From contig CALSCP010000837.1 in assembly GCA_943704425.1 (NCBI GenBank), positions 1 through 63,856 of the forward strand: a stretch of DNA of 63,856 bases, written 5' to 3'. The DNA comes from Ministeria vibrans ATCC 50519. Taxonomy: Eukaryota > Protista > Filasterea. The position numbers were made by a program, and so were the translations under genes. Under the pieces are notes generated by a model that saw only the letters and a program-made list of their open reading frames with translations, searched no databases and was not told where the DNA came from. Shown here piece by piece: positions 14,269 through 23,513 of the stretch (position 1 is the first letter of the stretch; each line of letters begins with the position of its first letter).

Positions 14269-14844
14269 ATGTTTTATCCTCTGAAAGATGGTGCACTTGA
14301 CTTTGCAGGAGCCACTCTTGTCATTGTACAAATCGACTTTTTACTCTCTCCTCTCTTACTCTCCTCGCTCACTCTCTCCGTCTCTCTAGCCATCCGTATC
14401 CATCGGCAACGTTGGTCAGCTTGCGATAGACCTTCTTGTCACCTCGCTGGGTAGGCTTGATCAACTTGGCCCATTTGATTTGGTCGTGATTGTTCGTTTT
14501 TGCAGAACTCGAATGTGTAGGCCATTTGCTGCACGACAGCGTGCTGCCCGTCACCGGATACGATGTGCGGGGCACACACAAGGTTCTGTGCACCAGCCTG
14601 GAAGGTAACAGTGGCCGGCGGCCAGCAAGCGGTCGCTGAGTCACCCGTTGTGTTGTGTAGTGTACTACAAGGAGGCCAATGGCCAGCGCCTCGTCATGGT
14701 CCAACAGCGTGCTCCCATTGTGCGCGGACGAACACCCGAGTTTGTTGCAAGCCTGGTTGCTTGGGCCACAGACGCTCGTATGGCGGCCATTGTCAACTTG
14801 AGCTCGAGCGACCGCCGTCACCGCACTGACGCACAAATAGACGG
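14269..14844 (+). CDS. PSMG2: Proteasome assembly chaperone 2, 5' half only
   Basis: Spliced exons give MFYP...GATLVI|PSVSIGNVGQLAIDLLVTSL|ELECVGHLLHDSVLPVTG...CTSLE|VY...VQQRAPIVRG...LVAWA...LSSSD...RTDAQI. No downstream exons were found after the donor at 14845. Confidence 0.8.
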
Positions 14845-14880
14845 GTAAGGCGGAAGGGCGACGCGCAAGACGAAGACGCC

Positions 14881-15090
<210 letters not shown>

Positions 15091-16338: not shown

Positions 16339-18421
16339 TTATGCCTGGTGCTTCTCGGCAAACATCTGCTTGAGATCACCGGTTGCGTTGTCGTTGCGAA
16401 TGGGTGTCAACTTGAACTTGTCGACGAGCACGTTGAGGACGTTGGGGGTGACAAAGGCGGGAAGGGCGGGGCCGAGACGGATGTTTTGGACGTTGAGCGA
16501 GAGGAGGGTGAGCAGGCAGGCGACAGCCTTTTGCTCGAGCCACGAGAGCGAGATGGAGAGGGGCAGGTCGTTGACGGAGCACTTGTAGTGACTGGCGAGT
16601 GTGGTGGCGACCTGCACGGCCGAAAAGGAGTCGTTGCACTGGCCCATGTCGAGGAGACGCGGCAGTCCGCCGAGGGTGCCAAAGTCCATCTTGTTGAAGC
16701 GGTACTTGGCGCAGCCAAGCGTGAGCAGCAGCGAGTCGGGTTGGTCCTTGATTTCGCGGGCGAGCTCGGAGAAGTAGGCGCGCTCGGGCTCGGCGCCGTC
16801 GCATCCGCCGACAAGGTAGATGTGCTTGAGGGCACCGGAGTCAATGGCGCCAATGACGGTCTCGGCAACACCGAGAACCGCCTCGTGGCCAAAGCCAGTA
16901 AGGAGCGTCTTGGCCTTGGCACGGCTGGCCTCGGCGGCGGACGACTCAGCGGTGAATCCGGGCGAGGCAAGTGCTGCGTCAATGACGGCCGAGTAGTCAT
17001 TGCCCTCGATGTGCGAGACGCCCGGCCAACCAGTGGGGCCTGCGGTAAAAATGCGTGCCTTGTACGACGTGCGCGGCTCCTGGATGCAGTTGGTGGTCAT
17101 GAGAATGGGACCGGGGAATTTGGCAAATTCGAATTTTTGGAGTTGCCAGGGCCCGCCGTAGTGACCCGCGAGGCTGGGGCTCTCGCGCAGCTTGGGATAG
17201 CCGTGAGCGGGGAGCATCTCGCCGTGAGTGTACACATTGACACCCTTGCTTTCAGCCTGTTTCAGCAGATCGCGCAGGTTGCCCATGTCGTGACCACTGA
17301 CGAGGATGCAGGGGCCCACCTTGGGTACGAGAGACGCCTCGGCGGGGCTCGGTGAGCCAAAGTGATTGCGGTGGGCGCTGTCAAGCAGGCCAAGAACGGT
17401 GCCGTTGGCTTTGCCGGTCTCGAGGGCCAAACCAAGCAGATCGCCGGTCTCAGTGGTGGTGTCGAGGCGTGAGAGAGTGCTGCGCACAAAGTCGTAGACC
17501 TCGTCGCTCTCGGCACCCAGTGTCATGGCGTGGTGGGCGTAGGCCGCAAGACCCTTGATGCCGTACATGATAAGCTCTTGGAGACCCGCAGTGTCCTCGC
17601 CGAGCGTTGCCTGCTTGGCGCGCACGCCCACAGCGCGCGTCTGCTCCTCTTCGCCCGTTGGCACAAACGACGTGCGGGACGACAGCTTGTTCGCGGCGTC
17701 CGCTGGGAGTTGGGCGCGCAGGCGCTCGCGCGATTGCACAACCTCATCGAGGTACGCCTTGATGCGAACCGGGTCAAAGTTGACGTTGGTCAGCGTCGAA
17801 AAGACGCAACTACAAACAACGAAAAAAAAAAGAATAAGGGAAGTGTTTTCATTGGACGATGAATTTGTGGTCTAGTCTTACTCAAGCATAAGGCGATCCG
17901 AGTTCTCATCGAGAACGCCCGCGGCCTTTGCAGCCTCGGCGACCTCGGCGTGGCCCTTGAGTGTGTGGAGGAGAACATCCTAAGGAAGACAGAAGAAATG
18001 AGATTTTTTGTTTTCAGCGTGTGTGCGAGAAAAACGTGTTGCGGGAAAAGTTTCAACCCTGCAGTGTTGCAATAGACTCTTGGGCACGAATTTATGATCG
18101 GGAATGAAGGAGAAGGGGGCGATTGTGATTGGAATCTTTTTATTTCGGGAAAAAACAACAAAAAAAAAGAAACTCGCACTTCCGCGCAAATACTCAGACT
18201 AAAAAAAAAACGCTAAGCTCAATTCATACCTGGAGGCCTGCAGTCTCGGGAGTCTTGCCACACACACCAACGGTGGTGCACCCGGTGCCGGATTCGGTTT
18301 GTTCGCACTGAAAGCAGAACATTTTCTCGTCGTTTGTTTGGGTTGCAACGCCACGGGATGGCATAGCCGCCGCCAAGCGGCTCATGTTGCCTCCAAATCG
18401 TGATGCAACGACTCGAAGCAT
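16339..18421 (-). CDS. hcp: Hybrid cluster protein (prismane; hydroxylamine/NO reductase) with N-terminal mitochondrial-type presequence
   Basis: Exons 18421-18230, 17979-17882 and 17809-16339. Motifs: MFCFQCEQT...[10 protein letters not shown] (CxxC-x8-C-x5-C), [73 protein letters not shown]. Confidence 0.95.
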
Positions 18422-19019
18422 GATTGTTTTTTGAGAGTAAAGGAAGCGCGAAAAAAACTAAAAAGAAATTTAGCTAAGAGCTTTCAAGTTTTTTGAGGTG
18501 TGACTGATCTTCACCTGATCTTGTCGTCCCGCTGATGACACAGGAAGCTTGAGCGGTTTTTTGTGCACCAGCAATGTAGATTATAGATATGCCTTAGTTT
18601 AATGCTATTGGATTGATCTAGAAGAAGGAGAAAGGCAGATGGGCGACAGGGCCGAATTGGATGGGCAACGCATTTGGCAGAAACTCGCGCCTCTCGCATT
18701 AGAGCTGTCCCGGCGAGATTCGTCGATCATCGTCTATCGGCGCGGCTTCATCGTAACATTAGTGCATTAATAATGCCGTGTGGGGGGACGAGAAATCTAT
18801 ATTGAGACGTGGAGCGGCGAAGCGGAGAAGTGCGAGGTTTGAGTTTGGAACCGTCATCTGCGAAATTTTTGAAAATCTGCTGATCTGACCGGGTACAGTG
18901 ATCGTCCTTGCCCCCATTTGATATAAAAAGGATTAAGGTACATGTGTGGAGGGCGCCGGAGCCTCTTTGCTTCGTTCATGCTTCTCACGACTCAGTTTTA
19001 CTCACTTTTTTTCACTCTA

Positions 19020-22000
19020 ATGTTCTCTTTTGGACGGTCCATTGTTGGACGACTGAATCGACGGATGTTGAGCACCAATGTACTGTACGGCAGCACCACG
19101 GGCACGGCCGAGTACTTTTCTCAGGAATTGGCGGCGAACCTTGGGGCAGCGACGCGTCTGAGCAGCCTGCATGCGGTGGATGCGTCGGCGGAAATCCCCA
19201 AGATGGAACGCGCCGTCTTTCTGCTGTCGTGCTACGGCAAGGGCGAGCCGACCGAGTCGTCCAAGTCCTTTTACGACTGGGTCATGAGCGACAGTGCGCC
19301 GCGCTTGGATAATCTTGAGGTAAGGTTTCTTTTTTTTTATTAATTTCGCAAACCTAATAATTCCTTTTTTACATTTGATATATTATTTATTATATTATAT
19401 TGTTTTTTGAGAGGGGTGGGTGAGTGAGGGGGTAGTTGTTTTGTTTTGTTCTCATATGATTAATGCAGTCATTCTGTAAAGTTTGATATTATTTTTTTTT
19501 GTGTGGAGTGCGTTAACATAAAAATAATTTTAATAATAATAATAATAATTTTTATATTATCTTGTTGTGAAACTATATTGTGGTGATGTTGTCTCGGAGG
19601 GGTTTTTGTGATTACGACAACACCTATTGTTAATTGTGTGTTTAATTTGAGCAATGGTTTTATGACTTAATTGAGTCCGATATATAATAATAATAATAAT
19701 TATCAATTATATAATTATTACTCTTGCAATTGTTTCATCCGTACTTGAAACAATTCACTAATAATAATATGTTCTCTTACTAGTATTGCGTATTCGGACT
19801 TGGATCCTCCAAAGCACACTGCAAGCACTACAATGTGATTGGCACGCGTGTGGATGCGCGTCTGGCCGAACTCGGCGCCAAGCGCATTCTGGATTTGGGA
19901 CTGGGCGATGATTCGCAAGGTAAACAGAGGACAATTATTTCGTATATAAGAAGAAACAATATTGTAAACGATGTTTTCTGTGCTTAGATATTGAAATGGA
20001 TTTTGAAGAGTGGAGTGGCACAGTGCGCAAAGTGATTACAGAGCGCGAGAGTACCACAAAAGCTGACACGTCTAAAGCAGAGCCAGCAAAAGTAGAAGAG
20101 ACGACAGCAGCAGAGGAACCAAAGAATCCAATGCGCTATGTGTGTACTGAGGACTCCACTTGCACTACCGACTCGCTTGACCCGGCACTTATTGACAGTG
20201 TGTTTCATGATGTACGAAAAGCAAATCAAAAAGGGTGCATTAATTTTTAATTAATATTGTTGTTTTTTTTTAATCACAGCCAAGAACAGTTGTGATGAAA
20301 GTAAAGCAACAACGGGTCCTGACACCAAACACCACAGCGGACCGCTACGCCTTTGAGCTTATGCTAACCCCAACACGGCCCTCTCCGTACACCACCGGCG
20401 ATCATGTTGTCATTTACCCGCGCCAGTCTCGCCTCACAGTCGATCGAGTGCTCACTGCCACTCGTTTGGATGCCACTCAGGTCTTCCAGCTCACTGCTCG
20501 CTCAACCAATGCTCAGGTGCCCTTTGAGTCCAAGACCACTCTCAAAGAGGTAATAATATTATTAATATAATATTATTATTATTATTATTGTTATTATTAT
20601 TGTTATTATTTTTTAAAAAAATTACGGGTTAATAATTATTATTAATTGCTCTTTCATGTCGTTGTGCACTTTGTTTCGGCCTTCTCTGTTTTTATTACTA
20701 CTAATTGGGGGGCTTCGCAGAGAATTTGTGTCACTCTCTCTTATAGTATATTTTATTATTATTACTATTATTATTAATTTTTATTCTGATGTTTTTGCTA
20801 ATGTAATTGTCGTCTTCACGACGCCACATCCCTTTATAGGCTCTGACCAAGTACCTTGACGCCCTGGCCTCTCCCACTCCCAACTCTCTGCGCCAACTCG
20901 CGTCTCTACTCCCTTCCTCCCATCCTACACACACGCTCTTCCACAAGATCAGCTCAGATCGTGCTCTCTTCCGCGAACACATCACCGACAAACAGAATAC
21001 TCTCGTCGACCTTCTCGAGACCATCTCATCTCACTCGCACATTTCAAACGAACCCCTCTGCTCGCTCCACCAACTCGTCGAGCTCTTGCCCGTCATTCGG
21101 CCTCGCATCTACTCCATCTCCTCCTCGTCCAAAGTACCAATCAAATTCATGTCAAAACACTCTAATTACTCATTGTTATTATTTTATTGCTAGGAATTTC
21201 CCGATACGATTGGAGTAACGTATCGTCACACAGAGTTTGTCACGACAGAAGGAAAAAGGCGATTTGGTATGTTTGTTTTTCATACGTATAAAATGCGACT
21301 CTAGTTGAGAATATTTCTGGCGCAATGAGAACTCAAATTAATATTAAAAATATAATAATATTGTTATTTTCATTTTGTTTGTTTAGGTCTTTGTACAAAC
21401 TATATGGAAAAACTGGGAGAAGGAAACGAACTGTTAGGGTTCGTGCGCGCAAACAGCAACTTCCATCTTCCCTCTAACGCAGCAGAGCCTGTTGTGTTTG
21501 TGGGCGCTGGCACTGGCATTGCCCCGTTCAATGGACTCCTCCGTAAAAATATTTAATTAATAGCAAAATATTTCTTCTTATCTTTATACTTATTAATGTT
21601 TTGATGTTGTGACTTGTTTTTATTATTCATTTATTCTAATGTGTACTCTGTTGGGTTTACAGGCGAACGGTTGTTTGATATGAAACAGGGCAAAACAATG
21701 GGGCAAATTCGCACTTGTTTTGGATTCCTTTCACCCGAAGAATCCATTTACAAACCGGAATTTGAGCGAATCGAACGTGAGAACCCCAAACTCAATCTTC
21801 ATTTGCGCTTTGTCTATTCTCACAAGGTAGCAAAAAGAAAATAATAAGCATTGTGTATTTTCTCTAACTAAAATAATAATAATTTAGCCGCCCGGCAACG
21901 AACACACTGCGCTGCCCTCCACCGCTCTTCTTGACGATGCGCCAACACTCTACCGCCTTCTTACCACCCGAGAGGGCTCTGTCTACGTCTGTGGCGGTGC

Positions 22001-22202
22001 TGCGGGTTTTGGCGCGGCCGTCAGAGAGTCCTTTATCCGCATTTTCAGCGAGCAGGTATCATGAATATAACATTCATAACTTTGTATTTTGTTTCGATTG
22101 CTAATAATTTTATTTTAGGGCGGAATAAGTGCGGATGAAGCAAGTGACTTGATGCTCAAACTCATCGAGACTGGTCACTATTGTGAAGATTTGGCCGATT
22201 AA
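19020..22202 (+). CDS. Diflavin (FMN+FAD) oxidoreductase, cytochrome P450 reductase-like, with mitochondrial-type presequence
   Basis: Multi-exon gene. FMN domain: VLYGSTTGTAE, SCYGKGEPTE, YCVFGLGSS...LAELGAKRILDLGLGDD..IEMDFEEW. FAD/NAD domains: YTTGDHVVIYP, RPRIYSISSS, GLCTNY, VFVGAGTGIAPF, VYVCG. Ends GHYCEDLAD* (TAA 22200-22202). Confidence 0.85.
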
Positions 22203-22282: not shown

Positions 22283-23513
22283 CTACGCAACCTCTTGGGT
22301 ACCCGCCCTCCCCTTGCCCCTCCTGACGTGGGCTGCGCTGTAGAGCGGACGCACAAGGTTACCCCACAGCAGCGCAGTGTGACACTTCGGACATTCTCCC
22401 TTGTGTGGCAGAAGCAGAGGCACAGAACAATCGTCCATGCCATGCTCACTCTCCCGCTCGAGAAAGACCCTGGCAAGACAACGCACATGCGACTCAAAGG
22501 TACACCCGGGTGCTTTGGGACAGACGAGCTTAGGTGCGTCGGTGAGCTGAGTGCGGTGACATACATCGCATGTCCAATCGGCAAGCGAGCTGTCGCGCAC
22601 CGCCTGCGACATGAGCAGCGCATCAATAAGATCATCGTCAAGATTCGTGTCGTCCTGAGGCGCCGCCAATGAAACACTTTCAAGGTCACTGACCGCTTCT
22701 TCGTCATCATCATCCACATCGTCCTCTGCAAGAGCGGTCAAGAGAGCATCGAGATGCTCTTGAGTGAGCGTCGTCTGTTGCTGTGACAGTTGTTGGTTAT
22801 CTTCGTCAACAAGACCACCCCCTTCCCTTTCGCGCTTTCGACGCTTGCGGGCCTCGTCGCGGTCTTCGACGAGCGTCACCAATGGCCCAAATCGAAGGGG
22901 AACTGTGTCGGGAGGTGTTTGCATCACTTTGACGAGCACCGAGTCCCACAGATCCCGCCGGAACACTTGAAGGTTCAAAGGGAGACGTCGCCAGGCGTTT
23001 GCATGCAGCATCTCGCCAAGAACACGCGCCTTGGTCAGCAGAGTGCTCCGTTTGCTGAGGATCACAGAGGGGTTGCGCAAACGGCGCGATTCACACGGAT
23101 GCTGCCACGCCCACTCGAATTTGAGGGCGCTCACCTCGTCCATGAAGCCATACACAATGCACACCATCTCCCTAGAGTGGTGGTGAGAGTGGAGCGAGAG
23201 GAGAAGGAGGACGAGCGAGCGAGCGAGCGAAAGAGAGAATGAGGTTTGAAAATGTGTGTTTTGAAAGAGTCGCTCACCATGGACGCTTGCGGTGGGTTTT
23301 GTGGGCCCCGCCATGGTCGCTGCCTGCATTGTGTTGGCCAATCCTTCGTTGGGGGTCGACAGTGAAGCCGATGTAGGCGTCGTCGAGGTTTCGTTGGGAG
23401 AGGGAGCGCAAAAGGTAAACACCGAAGAAGGGAGTGGTTGCACAGTCGTCAAGGACGCCTCCAAGCTGCGCACGCGTTCGCTTGAGCGTGATCTGTTGTG
23501 CTTGCTGTGACAT
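22283..23513 (-). CDS. SLX1: Structure-specific endonuclease subunit SLX1 (GIY-YIG + RING/PHD-like)
   Basis: Intron 23172-23277. Motifs: [34 protein letters not shown]|EMVCIVYGF...[12 protein letters not shown]-terminal CxxC...H..CLA...CPKC...WG.LV. Confidence 0.95.

What the first reader, a model, noticed from the sequence alone, without database searches (positions are those of the whole stretch)
16339..22202. Head-to-head hybrid cluster protein + diflavin reductase, both with mitochondrial-type presequences: candidate eukaryotic Hcp/Hcr-analogous system
Seen in sequence: hcp (ATG 18421, minus strand) and a CPR-like FMN/FAD reductase (ATG 19020, plus strand) are divergent, with 598 bp between the start codons. 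Both begin with Arg-rich, acid-free extensions ([26 protein letters not shown]; MFSFGRSIVGRLNRRMLS), and the reductase lacks the ER anchor of true CPR. Established: in enterobacteria Hcp acts as a high-affinity NO reductase with its co-operonic NADH oxidoreductase Hcr (FAD + 2Fe-2S), while electron donors for eukaryotic HCPs are poorly defined. Inference: a co-regulated mitochondrial NO/hydroxylamine-reducing module for hypoxia or nitrosative stress, using a flavodoxin-type diflavin enzyme in place of Hcr.
Basis: partly seen in the sequence, partly recalled or inferred. Interest (0 to 1): 0.85.

Follow-up and report, generated by a model that had tools for sequence, protein, structure and literature searches.

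The report
Hybrid cluster protein with paired reductase
A protist keeps its gene for the iron-sulfur enzyme HCP back-to-back with a gene for an unusual two-flavin reductase, and pennate diatoms have the same pairing, so this reductase is a strong candidate for the unknown electron donor of eukaryotic HCP.

Summary
A 3-exon hybrid cluster protein gene (minus strand, 586 codons) and a 10-exon diflavin reductase gene (plus strand, 622 codons) lie head-to-head, 598 bp between start codons. Spliced transcript contigs confirm ten of the eleven predicted introns; the fourth reductase intron was not reported as a joint.

The reductase is not an ordinary CPR, NDOR1 or MTRR. The genome encodes those elsewhere. 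This one belongs to a distinct clade (support 0.993) with these marks:
- the protein ends in E-D-L-A-D, with Ala where CPR has its FAD-stacking Trp;
- it has CGGAxGFG in place of CGDA;
- it lacks the NADPH 2'-phosphate motif;
- its N-terminus is basic and resembles a mitochondrial presequence.

Members occur in diatoms, a rhizarian and a choanoflagellate.

In 7 of 11 distinct loci from other organisms, this reductase is also head-to-head with an HCP gene. Two are from named diatoms, Fragilaria crotonensis and a Bacillariaceae genome. Both diatom proteins also carry presequence-like extensions.

Electron transfer to HCP, the matrix location and NADH use are inferred, not shown. An in-frame upstream ATG (18978) lies inside the mRNA and leaves the reductase N-terminus ambiguous. 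I found no paper describing the pairing. I rate it a new variant of the Hcp/Hcr principle.

The parts
16339..17809 (-). HCP exon 3 (489 codons plus stop at 16339-16341). Holds the whole hybrid-cluster domain.
   Evidence: Pfam Prismane 3e-120. PDB hits to solved HCPs, best 7de4 at 3e-134, with the SGHD, THGE, TNC, GGCDG, GCAKY, GQCND and SWLEQK ligand motifs aligned. Covered by spliced contigs.
17810..17881 (-). HCP intron 2 (72 nt, GT-AG).
   Evidence: Skipped in contigs of all four runs laid.
17882..17979 (-). HCP exon 2 (98 nt).
   Evidence: Frame kept across both junctions. Contigs.
17980..18229 (-). HCP intron 1 (250 nt, GT-AG).
   Evidence: Skipped in contigs of runs X6 and X8. The X1 contig that runs into it is chimeric: its loose end maps to another contig, C313.
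18230..18421 (-). HCP exon 1: a 33-codon basic extension (18421-18323), then the C-x2-C-x8-C-x5-C motif for the N-terminal [4Fe-4S] cluster.
   Evidence: Translation. Prismane profile positions 1-31. Charge and composition. Contig X6 reaches 18437, 16 nt upstream of the ATG.
18422..19019 (.). Shared 598-bp region between the start codons, a presumed bidirectional promoter. Transcript contigs leave about 515 bp uncovered at high depth (18438-18952).
   Evidence: Depth about 2-3 versus hundreds in the exons of X1. High-depth contig ends at 18437 and 18953.
18978..19019 (+). Possible alternative start of the reductase: an in-frame ATG adding 14 mostly hydrophobic residues.
   Evidence: ORF listing. 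Lies inside a transcript contig that starts at 18953. Hydropathy 1.35 over 17 residues.
19020..19319 (+). Reductase exon 1: an 18-codon basic extension plus the first half of the FMN (flavodoxin-like) domain.
   Evidence: Flavodoxin_1 2e-11. PDB CPR FMN domains about 1e-8..
19784..19919 (+). Reductase exon 2: second half of the FMN domain.
   Evidence: Flavodoxin_1 3e-6. 57% mean identity to the EDLAD clade versus 45% to CPRs.
19988..20211 (+). Reductase exon 3: end of the FMN domain and the acidic/Thr-rich hinge.
   Evidence: No Pfam hit.
20280..20549 (+). Reductase exon 4: start of the FAD-binding domain.
   Evidence: FAD_binding_1 1e-6.
20840..21133 (+). Reductase exon 5: connecting sub-domain and the R-x-Y-S FAD motif.
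   Evidence: FAD_binding_1 1.5e-11.
21194..21266 (+). Reductase exon 6.
   Evidence: Junctions confirmed.
21387..21542 (+). Reductase exon 7: the G-T-G-I-A-P-F nucleotide-binding motif.
   Evidence: Alignment. Junctions.
21663..21826 (+). Reductase exon 8: the region where CPR has its S-R 2'-phosphate motif, which is absent here.
   Evidence: Alignment.
21888..22055 (+). Reductase exon 9: holds the clade-specific C-G-G-A-x-G-F-G motif.
   Evidence: Alignment.
22119..22202 (+). Reductase exon 10: ends in E-D-L-A-D plus stop, with Ala in place of the FAD-stacking Trp.

Best explanation
The two genes encode a two-component mitochondrial redox enzyme. The reductase takes a hydride from NAD(P)H onto FAD, probably from NADH. 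It passes single electrons through FMN to the N-terminal [4Fe-4S] cluster of HCP. HCP then reduces a nitrogen oxide (NO or hydroxylamine) at its hybrid [4Fe-2S-2O] cluster. The shared 0.6-kb divergent promoter region would keep the two proteins co-expressed.

Shown:
- gene structures, splicing and expression;
- intact cofactor motifs in both proteins;
- membership of the reductase in a distinct clade of CPR descent;
- repeated head-to-head linkage of that clade with HCP in diatoms;
- presequence-like N-termini on both partners.

Inferred:
- physical electron transfer between the two proteins;
- matrix localisation;
- the substrate;
- NADH preference.
For: (1) Linkage recurs. EDLAD-clade reductase genes are head-to-head with a Prismane gene in 7 distinct loci:
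- L021-23;
- L024, a Bacillariaceae genome, 332-bp gap;
- L025;
- L026, L028 and L029;
- L031, Fragilaria crotonensis, 516-bp gap.
Flanking genes differ between these loci. The linked loci are spread through the diatom subtree.

(2) The window's protein shares the clade's derived characters: the E-D-L-A-D terminus, CGGAxGFG, and loss of the S-R and K-V-Y-V-Q motifs. Exon fragments e2, e4, e7 and e9 fall inside the clade, and e3 and e8 beside it.

(3) It is an extra paralogue. NDOR1-like, MTRR-like, CPR and Met10-like genes lie elsewhere in the genome.

(4) Both partners carry basic N-terminal extensions that are acid-free or nearly so, here and in diatoms. All clade members inspected do too, whereas canonical CPRs have hydrophobic anchors.

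(5) The genome shows no PFO, no true [FeFe]-hydrogenase and no NOS. The usual source of low-potential ferredoxin in anaerobic protists is therefore missing, which fits a dedicated NAD(P)H-linked donor.

(6) Mitochondrial, anoxia-induced HCP has been shown experimentally in Acanthamoeba, and that paper names no donor (PMC13632651).

(7) Both genes are covered in the same four runs. This is weak, because contig depth is not an expression measure.
Against: - There is no biochemical, interaction or localisation evidence.
- The complex prediction could not be run.
- Linkage is absent in 4 of 11 loci. These include Thalassiosirales, which have both genes unlinked. Adjacency is therefore not obligatory, and the clade may serve other acceptors.
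- ATG 18978 may add a hydrophobic N-terminal segment that could act as a membrane anchor.
- In Chlamydomonas, ferredoxin has been proposed as the HCP donor (PMC8003979).
- Exon fragments e1 and e5 fell among ordinary CPRs in the fragment tree.
- The window's HCP and diatom HCPs are only about 44% identical. The tree cannot say whether the pairing is inherited or convergent.
Confidence: 0.6

Rival explanations
1. The reductase is a general mitochondrial diflavin reductase with another main acceptor, such as a cytochrome b5-type or P450-type haem protein, haem oxygenase, or a radical-SAM or other Fe-S enzyme. It shares a promoter with HCP only because both belong to one stress or nitrogen regulon. 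HCP itself would be reduced by mitochondrial ferredoxin.
For: Clade members are unlinked to HCP in 4 of 11 loci. Thalassiosirales appear to have two paralogues. Ferredoxin has been proposed as the donor in Chlamydomonas. The FMN domain is closest to CPR FMN domains.
Against: Head-to-head pairing with HCP persists in two very distant lineages and through the diatom tree. No other gene recurs next to the reductase (same calls).
Confidence: 0.22
2. The two proteins work in different compartments. Translation from ATG 18978 gives a signal-anchored reductase on the ER or the mitochondrial outer membrane, facing the cytosol like CPR. HCP is in the matrix, so the two do not meet.
For: ATG 18978 is the first ATG in the transcript contig that starts at 18953. 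It adds a 17-residue segment with mean hydropathy 1.35, followed by four Arg. That is the layout of a signal anchor.
Against: Hydropathy is below the usual transmembrane threshold. All other clade members inspected have plain presequence-like N-termini. The X1 contig that defines 18953 is chimeric at its end. Both ATGs have weak contexts, so leaky scanning is possible; this rests on the sequence and is my inference.
Confidence: 0.12
3. The adjacency is chance in a compact genome and carries no functional meaning.
For: About a quarter of neighbouring gene pairs are divergent in any genome. Intergenic distances of about 0.5 kb are normal at this gene density (my inference).
Against: The same two families are divergent neighbours in 7 further loci from other organisms. 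Each is a single-copy gene here.
Confidence: 0.03

Closest known systems
Enterobacterial Hcp-Hcr (hybrid cluster protein plus NADH:HCP oxidoreductase)
   Same: An HCP gene is physically coupled to a gene for an NAD(P)H-dependent flavoprotein that would feed electrons to the HCP Fe-S clusters. The enzyme has the same overall logic as an NO or hydroxylamine reductase.
   Different: Hcr is a single-flavin FNR-type protein with FAD and a [2Fe-2S] cluster, in a co-directional operon (from memory and from the reference list of PMC13632651). Here the partner is a diflavin FMN+FAD protein of CPR descent with no Fe-S domain. The genes are divergent, have introns and carry presequences. The partner is an analogue of Hcr, not a homologue.
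NADPH-cytochrome P450 reductase (CPR/POR)
   Same: Flavodoxin_1 + FAD_binding_1 architecture. FMN loops, the R-x-Y-S motif, the G-T-G-x-A-P motif and the catalytic Cys and Asp are conserved. The clade nests among CPR-like sequences.
   Different: No clear ER anchor. The FAD-stacking Trp is replaced by Ala. CGDA is replaced by CGGA. The S-R/K 2'-phosphate motif is lost. A canonical CPR exists elsewhere in the genome.
Diflavin-to-Fe-S electron transfer systems: CysJ-CysI sulfite reductase and NDOR1/Tah18-Dre2
   Same: A diflavin reductase donates single electrons from FMN to an Fe-S protein. This is the mechanistic precedent for what is proposed here (established knowledge).
   Different: The acceptor differs. 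The genome has its own NDOR1-like and Met10-like genes. Sequence similarity to these is lower than to CPR.
Mitochondrial HCP of Acanthamoeba, and the HCPs of Chlamydomonas and Nyctotherus
   Same: A eukaryotic HCP of bacterial ancestry with a mitochondrial location. In Acanthamoeba it is induced by hypoxia or anoxia (PMC13632651).
   Different: No reductase partner is named in those studies. In Chlamydomonas, ferredoxin is the proposed donor. Here, a candidate partner gene sits next to HCP.

Membership tests
Hybrid cluster protein (Pfam Prismane PF03063) | Full-length match to the family profile | tested here: met
   402.7 bits, E 3e-120 on exon 3. Profile positions 1-31 match on exon 1. The best PDB hits are all solved HCPs.
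Hybrid cluster protein (Pfam Prismane PF03063) | N-terminal four-Cys motif for the cubane cluster | tested here: met
   C-x2-C-x8-C-x5-C read directly in exon 1. Bacterial and diatom HCPs have the same spacing. Calling this spacing 'class I' rests on memory and was not tested.
Hybrid cluster protein (Pfam Prismane PF03063) | Ligands of the hybrid cluster (His, Glu, Cys x3-4, Glu) | tested here: met
   The SGHD, THGE, TNC, GGCDG, GCAKY, GQCND and SWLEQK motifs align with the solved E. coli enzyme.
Diflavin reductase (CPR superfamily) | Flavodoxin-like FMN domain followed by an FAD-binding domain | tested here: met
   Flavodoxin_1 on exons 1-2 and FAD_binding_1 on exons 4-5.
Diflavin reductase (CPR superfamily) | NAD(P)H-binding domain (PF00175) | tested here: inconclusive
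   No Pfam hit on exons 7-9 searched singly. The G-T-G-I-A-P-F and C-G-G motifs are present in the alignment. The domain is also weak or undetected in several clade members.
Canonical NADPH-cytochrome P450 reductase | C-terminal aromatic residue (Trp) stacking on FAD | tested here: not met
   The protein ends E-D-L-A-D, with Ala aligned to the Trp.
Canonical NADPH-cytochrome P450 reductase | S-R ... K-x-Y-V-Q residues that bind the NADPH 2'-phosphate | tested here: not met
   Absent in exons 8-9 in the alignment with CPRs.
Canonical NADPH-cytochrome P450 reductase | N-terminal hydrophobic ER anchor | tested here: inconclusive
   None from ATG 19020. A weakly hydrophobic segment (mean 1.35) appears if ATG 18978 is used.
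E. coli Hcr-type NADH:HCP oxidoreductase | FNR-like FAD domain plus a [2Fe-2S] ferredoxin domain | tested here: not met
   The Pfam scan of the exons gave only flavodoxin and FAD_binding_1 and no ferredoxin-type domain.
EDLAD clade of presequence-bearing diflavin reductases (named here) | C-terminal [ED]-D-[LV]-[AS]-[DN] and the C-G-G-A-x-G-F-G motif | tested here: met
   The clade has support 0.993.
EDLAD clade of presequence-bearing diflavin reductases (named here) | Basic, acid-poor N-terminal extension instead of a membrane anchor | tested here: met
   with the ATG 18978 caveat.
EDLAD clade of presequence-bearing diflavin reductases (named here) | Placement of the whole protein inside the clade in a tree | tested here: inconclusive
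   Only exon fragments were placed: 4 of 8 inside the clade, 2 beside it and 2 among CPRs. The joined protein was not built.

The most novel reading that the evidence does not exclude
HCP and this Trp-less diflavin reductase form an old eukaryotic mitochondrial module, running NADH to FAD to FMN to HCP. It joins a bacterial enzyme with a reductase derived from eukaryotic CPR. The pair has been kept as a divergent gene pair, or moved as a two-gene cassette, across lineages as far apart as a holozoan-like protist and diatoms. It would be the missing electron donor of eukaryotic HCP and a natural NADH-type CPR relative.
Probability: 0.3. Interest if true: 0.85.

Novelty: new variant of a known kind. 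Interest (0 to 1): 0.7.

Why it matters
HCP is widespread, and recent work shows it in mitochondria and induced by anoxia. The papers I read name no mitochondrial donor: the Acanthamoeba study names none, and ferredoxin has been proposed for Chlamydomonas. A partner gene that recurs next to HCP gives a concrete, cheap test: mix two recombinant proteins with NADH or NADPH and with NO or hydroxylamine. It also defines an apparently undescribed clade of organelle-targeted diflavin reductases that lack the Trp 'lid'. That clade is of interest for flavoenzyme mechanism and coenzyme specificity. It also bears on nitrogen-oxide handling in diatoms, which matter for marine N2O and NO budgets.

Tried and rejected
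- **Ordinary orthologue.** Rejected. NDOR1-like, MTRR-like, CPR and Met10-like genes are present elsewhere.
- **Fusion proteins.** No HCP domain appeared in five long hits of the exon-1 search. None appeared among the best 120 hits of the clade profile. A review note that the Cyanophora HCP gene is 'fused to sulfite reductase' could not be followed up.
- **Complex prediction.** There is no result.
- **ESM Atlas look-up of the choanoflagellate member.** It gave only generic diflavin clusters.
- **IQ-TREE.** It failed on thread settings and then timed out. FastTree was used instead.
- **Upstream 5' exon or spliced leader for the reductase.** Rejected. The 27 loose letters map to another contig, C2364, apparently in a ubiquitin-L40-type gene. 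The loose end in HCP intron 1 maps to C313. Both are assembly chimeras in run X1.
- **Literature.** There were no papers with 'hybrid cluster protein' and 'diflavin' together. I found no description of the pairing in diatom or protist papers.
- **Typed peptides.** It was rerun from references.
- **Spliced model.** The exons were searched one by one. The joined protein was never built or searched.

Full report
**What is in the window.** The region holds two intron-bearing genes in divergent orientation. I set the exon boundaries from the sequence and checked them by frame.
- HCP gene: minus strand, three exons (18421-18230, 17979-17882, 17809-16339), 586 codons.
- Reductase gene: plus strand, ten exons from 19020 to 22202, 622 codons.

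All boundaries are GT-AG.

I never built, searched or put into a tree a joined protein. That step is left out.

**Domains.** Pfam on single exons gives:
- Prismane at 3e-120 on HCP exon 3, and the first 31 profile positions on exon 1;
- Flavodoxin_1 on reductase exons 1 and 2;
- FAD_binding_1 on reductase exons 4 and 5.

HCP exon 3 aligns over its length with solved HCPs, best with the E. coli enzyme at 3e-134. The motifs that carry the hybrid-cluster ligands are all present. Exon 1 carries the C-x2-C-x8-C-x5-C motif for the cubane cluster. The reductase keeps these cofactor motifs:
- the FMN loops;
- the R-x-Y-S FAD motif;
- the G-T-G-I-A-P-F motif;
- the catalytic Cys and Asp.

**Expression and splicing.** Sixteen public runs were listed, and fifteen of them, from eight studies, hold the stretch. 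Several hold about the share of words expected for spliced RNA. I laid contigs of four runs from four studies on 5,996 letters.
- Both HCP introns and eight of the nine reductase introns are skipped exactly where predicted.
- The fourth reductase intron (20550-20839) was not reported as a joint. One contig does run from exon 4 (to 20547) straight into exon 5 (from 20838).
- HCP contigs reach 18437.
- One reductase contig starts at 19014 and another at 18953.
- Two X1 contigs run on into unrelated DNA. The loose letters map to other contigs of the genome, C2364 and C313, so these are assembly chimeras and not extra exons.

**The reductase start codon.** The reductase frame is open upstream and holds ATGs at 18978 and 18942. 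A high-depth contig begins at 18953. ATG 18978 is therefore inside the mRNA, and ATG 18942 probably is not.
- From 19020 the extension is 18 residues with four Arg and no acidic residue.
- From 18978 it gains 14 mostly hydrophobic residues, with a 17-residue hydropathy mean of 1.35.

This could be part of a presequence or a weak signal anchor. The HCP extension is 33 residues with five basic residues, and its first acidic residue is at position 31. No targeting predictor was available.

**The reductase is not a housekeeping orthologue.** The genome (29.7 Mb, 2,860 contigs) has five FAD_binding_1 genes:
- an intronless NDOR1-like gene ending E-T-W-S;
- a Met10-like sulfite reductase alpha subunit;
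- an MTRR-like gene ending D-L-W;
- a multi-exon canonical CPR;
- the window's gene, which is the most divergent.

HCP is single-copy.

**A distinct clade.** A full scan of 1.84 billion representatives with reductase exon 1 gave no close orthologue. I then scored all exons against the hits. The best-scoring full-length proteins all ended in E-D-[LV]-[AS]-D, like the window's protein. Every one also had a basic, presequence-like N-terminus, whereas ordinary CPRs in the same list had hydrophobic anchors. A profile of eight members retrieved many more. Named members are:
- the diatoms Stephanodiscus, Cyclostephanos, Thalassiosira exigua, Conticribra and a Bacillariaceae genome;
- the rhizarian Lapot gusevi;
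- the choanoflagellate Mylnosiga fluctuans.

In a FastTree of 74 diflavin proteins the clade is monophyletic with support 0.993, and its diatom part has support 1.0.

The alignment shows derived characters that the window's exons share:
- C-G-G-A-x-G-F-G where CPRs have C-G-D-A;
- loss of the S-R and K-V-Y-V-Q residues that hold the NADPH 2'-phosphate;
- Ala in place of the FAD-stacking Trp.

I placed the exons as separate fragments. Four of eight fall inside the clade, two beside it and two among CPRs. Placement by tree is therefore only partly conclusive, and membership rests mainly on the shared motifs.

From memory, replacing that Trp in human CPR shifts preference toward NADH. Together with the lost phosphate-binding residues, this suggests NADH use. 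That is inference only.

**The decisive result: the pairing recurs.** I looked up the contigs that encode clade members.

| Linkage | Locus | Member or organism |
|---|---|---|
| Head-to-head with HCP | L021-L023 | P0295 |
| Head-to-head with HCP | L024 | Bacillariaceae genome GCA_046255265.1, 332-bp gap |
| Head-to-head with HCP | L025 | P0292 |
| Head-to-head with HCP | L026 | P0308 |
| Head-to-head with HCP | L028 | P0314 |
| Head-to-head with HCP | L029 | P0303 |
| Head-to-head with HCP | L031 | Fragilaria crotonensis GCA_022925895.1, 516-bp gap (found starting from its HCP) |
| Not adjacent | L012-L017 | Thalassiosirales-type cluster |
| Not adjacent | L018 | P0250 |
| Not adjacent | L019 | Cyclostephanos |
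| Not adjacent | L020 | P0304 |

- The flanking genes differ among the linked loci.
- A tblastn check found no HCP in L012-L019.
- The HCP of Cyclostephanos also lacks a reductase neighbour.
- Linked loci are spread through the diatom subtree, so linkage looks ancestral there and lost in some branches.
- The Fragilaria reductase ends in E-D-L-A-D.
- The Bacillariaceae and Fragilaria HCPs and reductases all carry long, basic, Ser/Thr-rich N-terminal extensions without a signal-peptide-like hydrophobic core.

**Origin of the pair.** HCP is found across diatoms: the best 120 hits to a diatom HCP are nearly all diatoms. The window's HCP shows these identities:
- about 55% to bacterial HCPs, where the named hits are mostly Verrucomicrobia and Planctomycetes;
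- 53% to the HCP of the ichthyosporean Amoebidium parasiticum, which also has a long presequence-like extension;
- about 44% to diatom HCPs.

In a FastTree, the window, Amoebidium and the diatoms all lie outside the sampled bacterial cluster. The sampling and rooting do not allow a choice between common inheritance, cassette transfer and independent assembly. The reductase clade nests among eukaryotic CPR-like proteins. The pair therefore joins an enzyme of bacterial type with a reductase of eukaryotic descent.

**Physiological context.** The genome shows the following:
- no NO synthase;
- no PFO, the only POR_N hit being the Met10-like gene;
- one Fe-hydrogenase-like hit, which I take to be the Nar1-type CIA protein (not checked);
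- one Mo-co dimer gene and one NIR_SIR gene, neither examined further.

The usual source of reduced ferredoxin in anaerobic protists is thus missing, which fits a dedicated NAD(P)H-linked donor. Earlier notes of this scan call the organism an apparent holozoan. I did not test this and no tool named it.

**What is known.** Mitochondrial, anoxia-induced HCP has been shown in Acanthamoeba, with no donor named (PMC13632651). Ferredoxin has been proposed as the donor in Chlamydomonas (PMC8003979). Diatom papers list HCP among nitrogen-metabolism genes of bacterial origin. I found no paper that pairs HCP with a diflavin reductase.

**Verdict.** The most likely mechanism is NAD(P)H to FAD to FMN to the HCP cubane cluster to the hybrid cluster, working in mitochondria (confidence about 0.6).

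The main open points are:
- whether electron transfer actually occurs;
- the compartment, given ATG 18978;
- the coenzyme;
- whether the clade also serves other acceptors.

I rate it a new variant of the Hcp/Hcr principle, with a non-homologous partner, and of good interest because it is directly testable.

Noticed in passing
window 18953 and 18206 (run X1 contigs); G000:C2364:26344-26370; G000:C313:218133-218162: Two high-depth Logan contigs of run X1 join this locus to unrelated contigs. One join is at the reductase 5' end, to a sequence that looks like a ubiquitin-L40 gene. The other is at a T-run in HCP intron 1. Both look like assembly chimeras, so contig ends in that run should not be read as transcript ends.
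   Followed up: partly
window 16987: A G>C difference inside HCP exon 3 appears in contigs of runs X6 and X8 but not X1 or X5. It probably reflects strain or allele variation.
   Followed up: no
window 22283-23513 (minus strand): ORFs with a GIY-YIG-like N-terminal motif and a Cys-rich C-terminus, resembling an SLX1-type structure-specific endonuclease. They are convergent with the reductase, and the ORF ends only about 80 bp from its stop codon.
   Followed up: no
window 14369-15070: A long (CT)n/(GA)n microsatellite gives spurious Ser-Leu repeat ORFs on both strands.
   Followed up: no
G000:C881, C216, C1961, C198 (loci L001-L005, L008): The genome's other diflavin genes: an intronless NDOR1-like gene, a Met10-like sulfite reductase alpha subunit with a PFOR-like N-terminal part, an MTRR-like gene, and a multi-exon canonical CPR.
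   Followed up: partly
PMC8003979, table note d: [quoted passage not shown] JGI names EDLAD-clade proteins 'sulfite reductase alpha subunit-like flavoprotein'. This may therefore be another HCP-diflavin linkage, in a glaucophyte.
   Followed up: no
P0291 (743 aa, ENA metagenome): A member of the EDLAD clade carries EF-hand domains according to its precomputed Pfam list. This hints at calcium control in some lineages.
   Followed up: no
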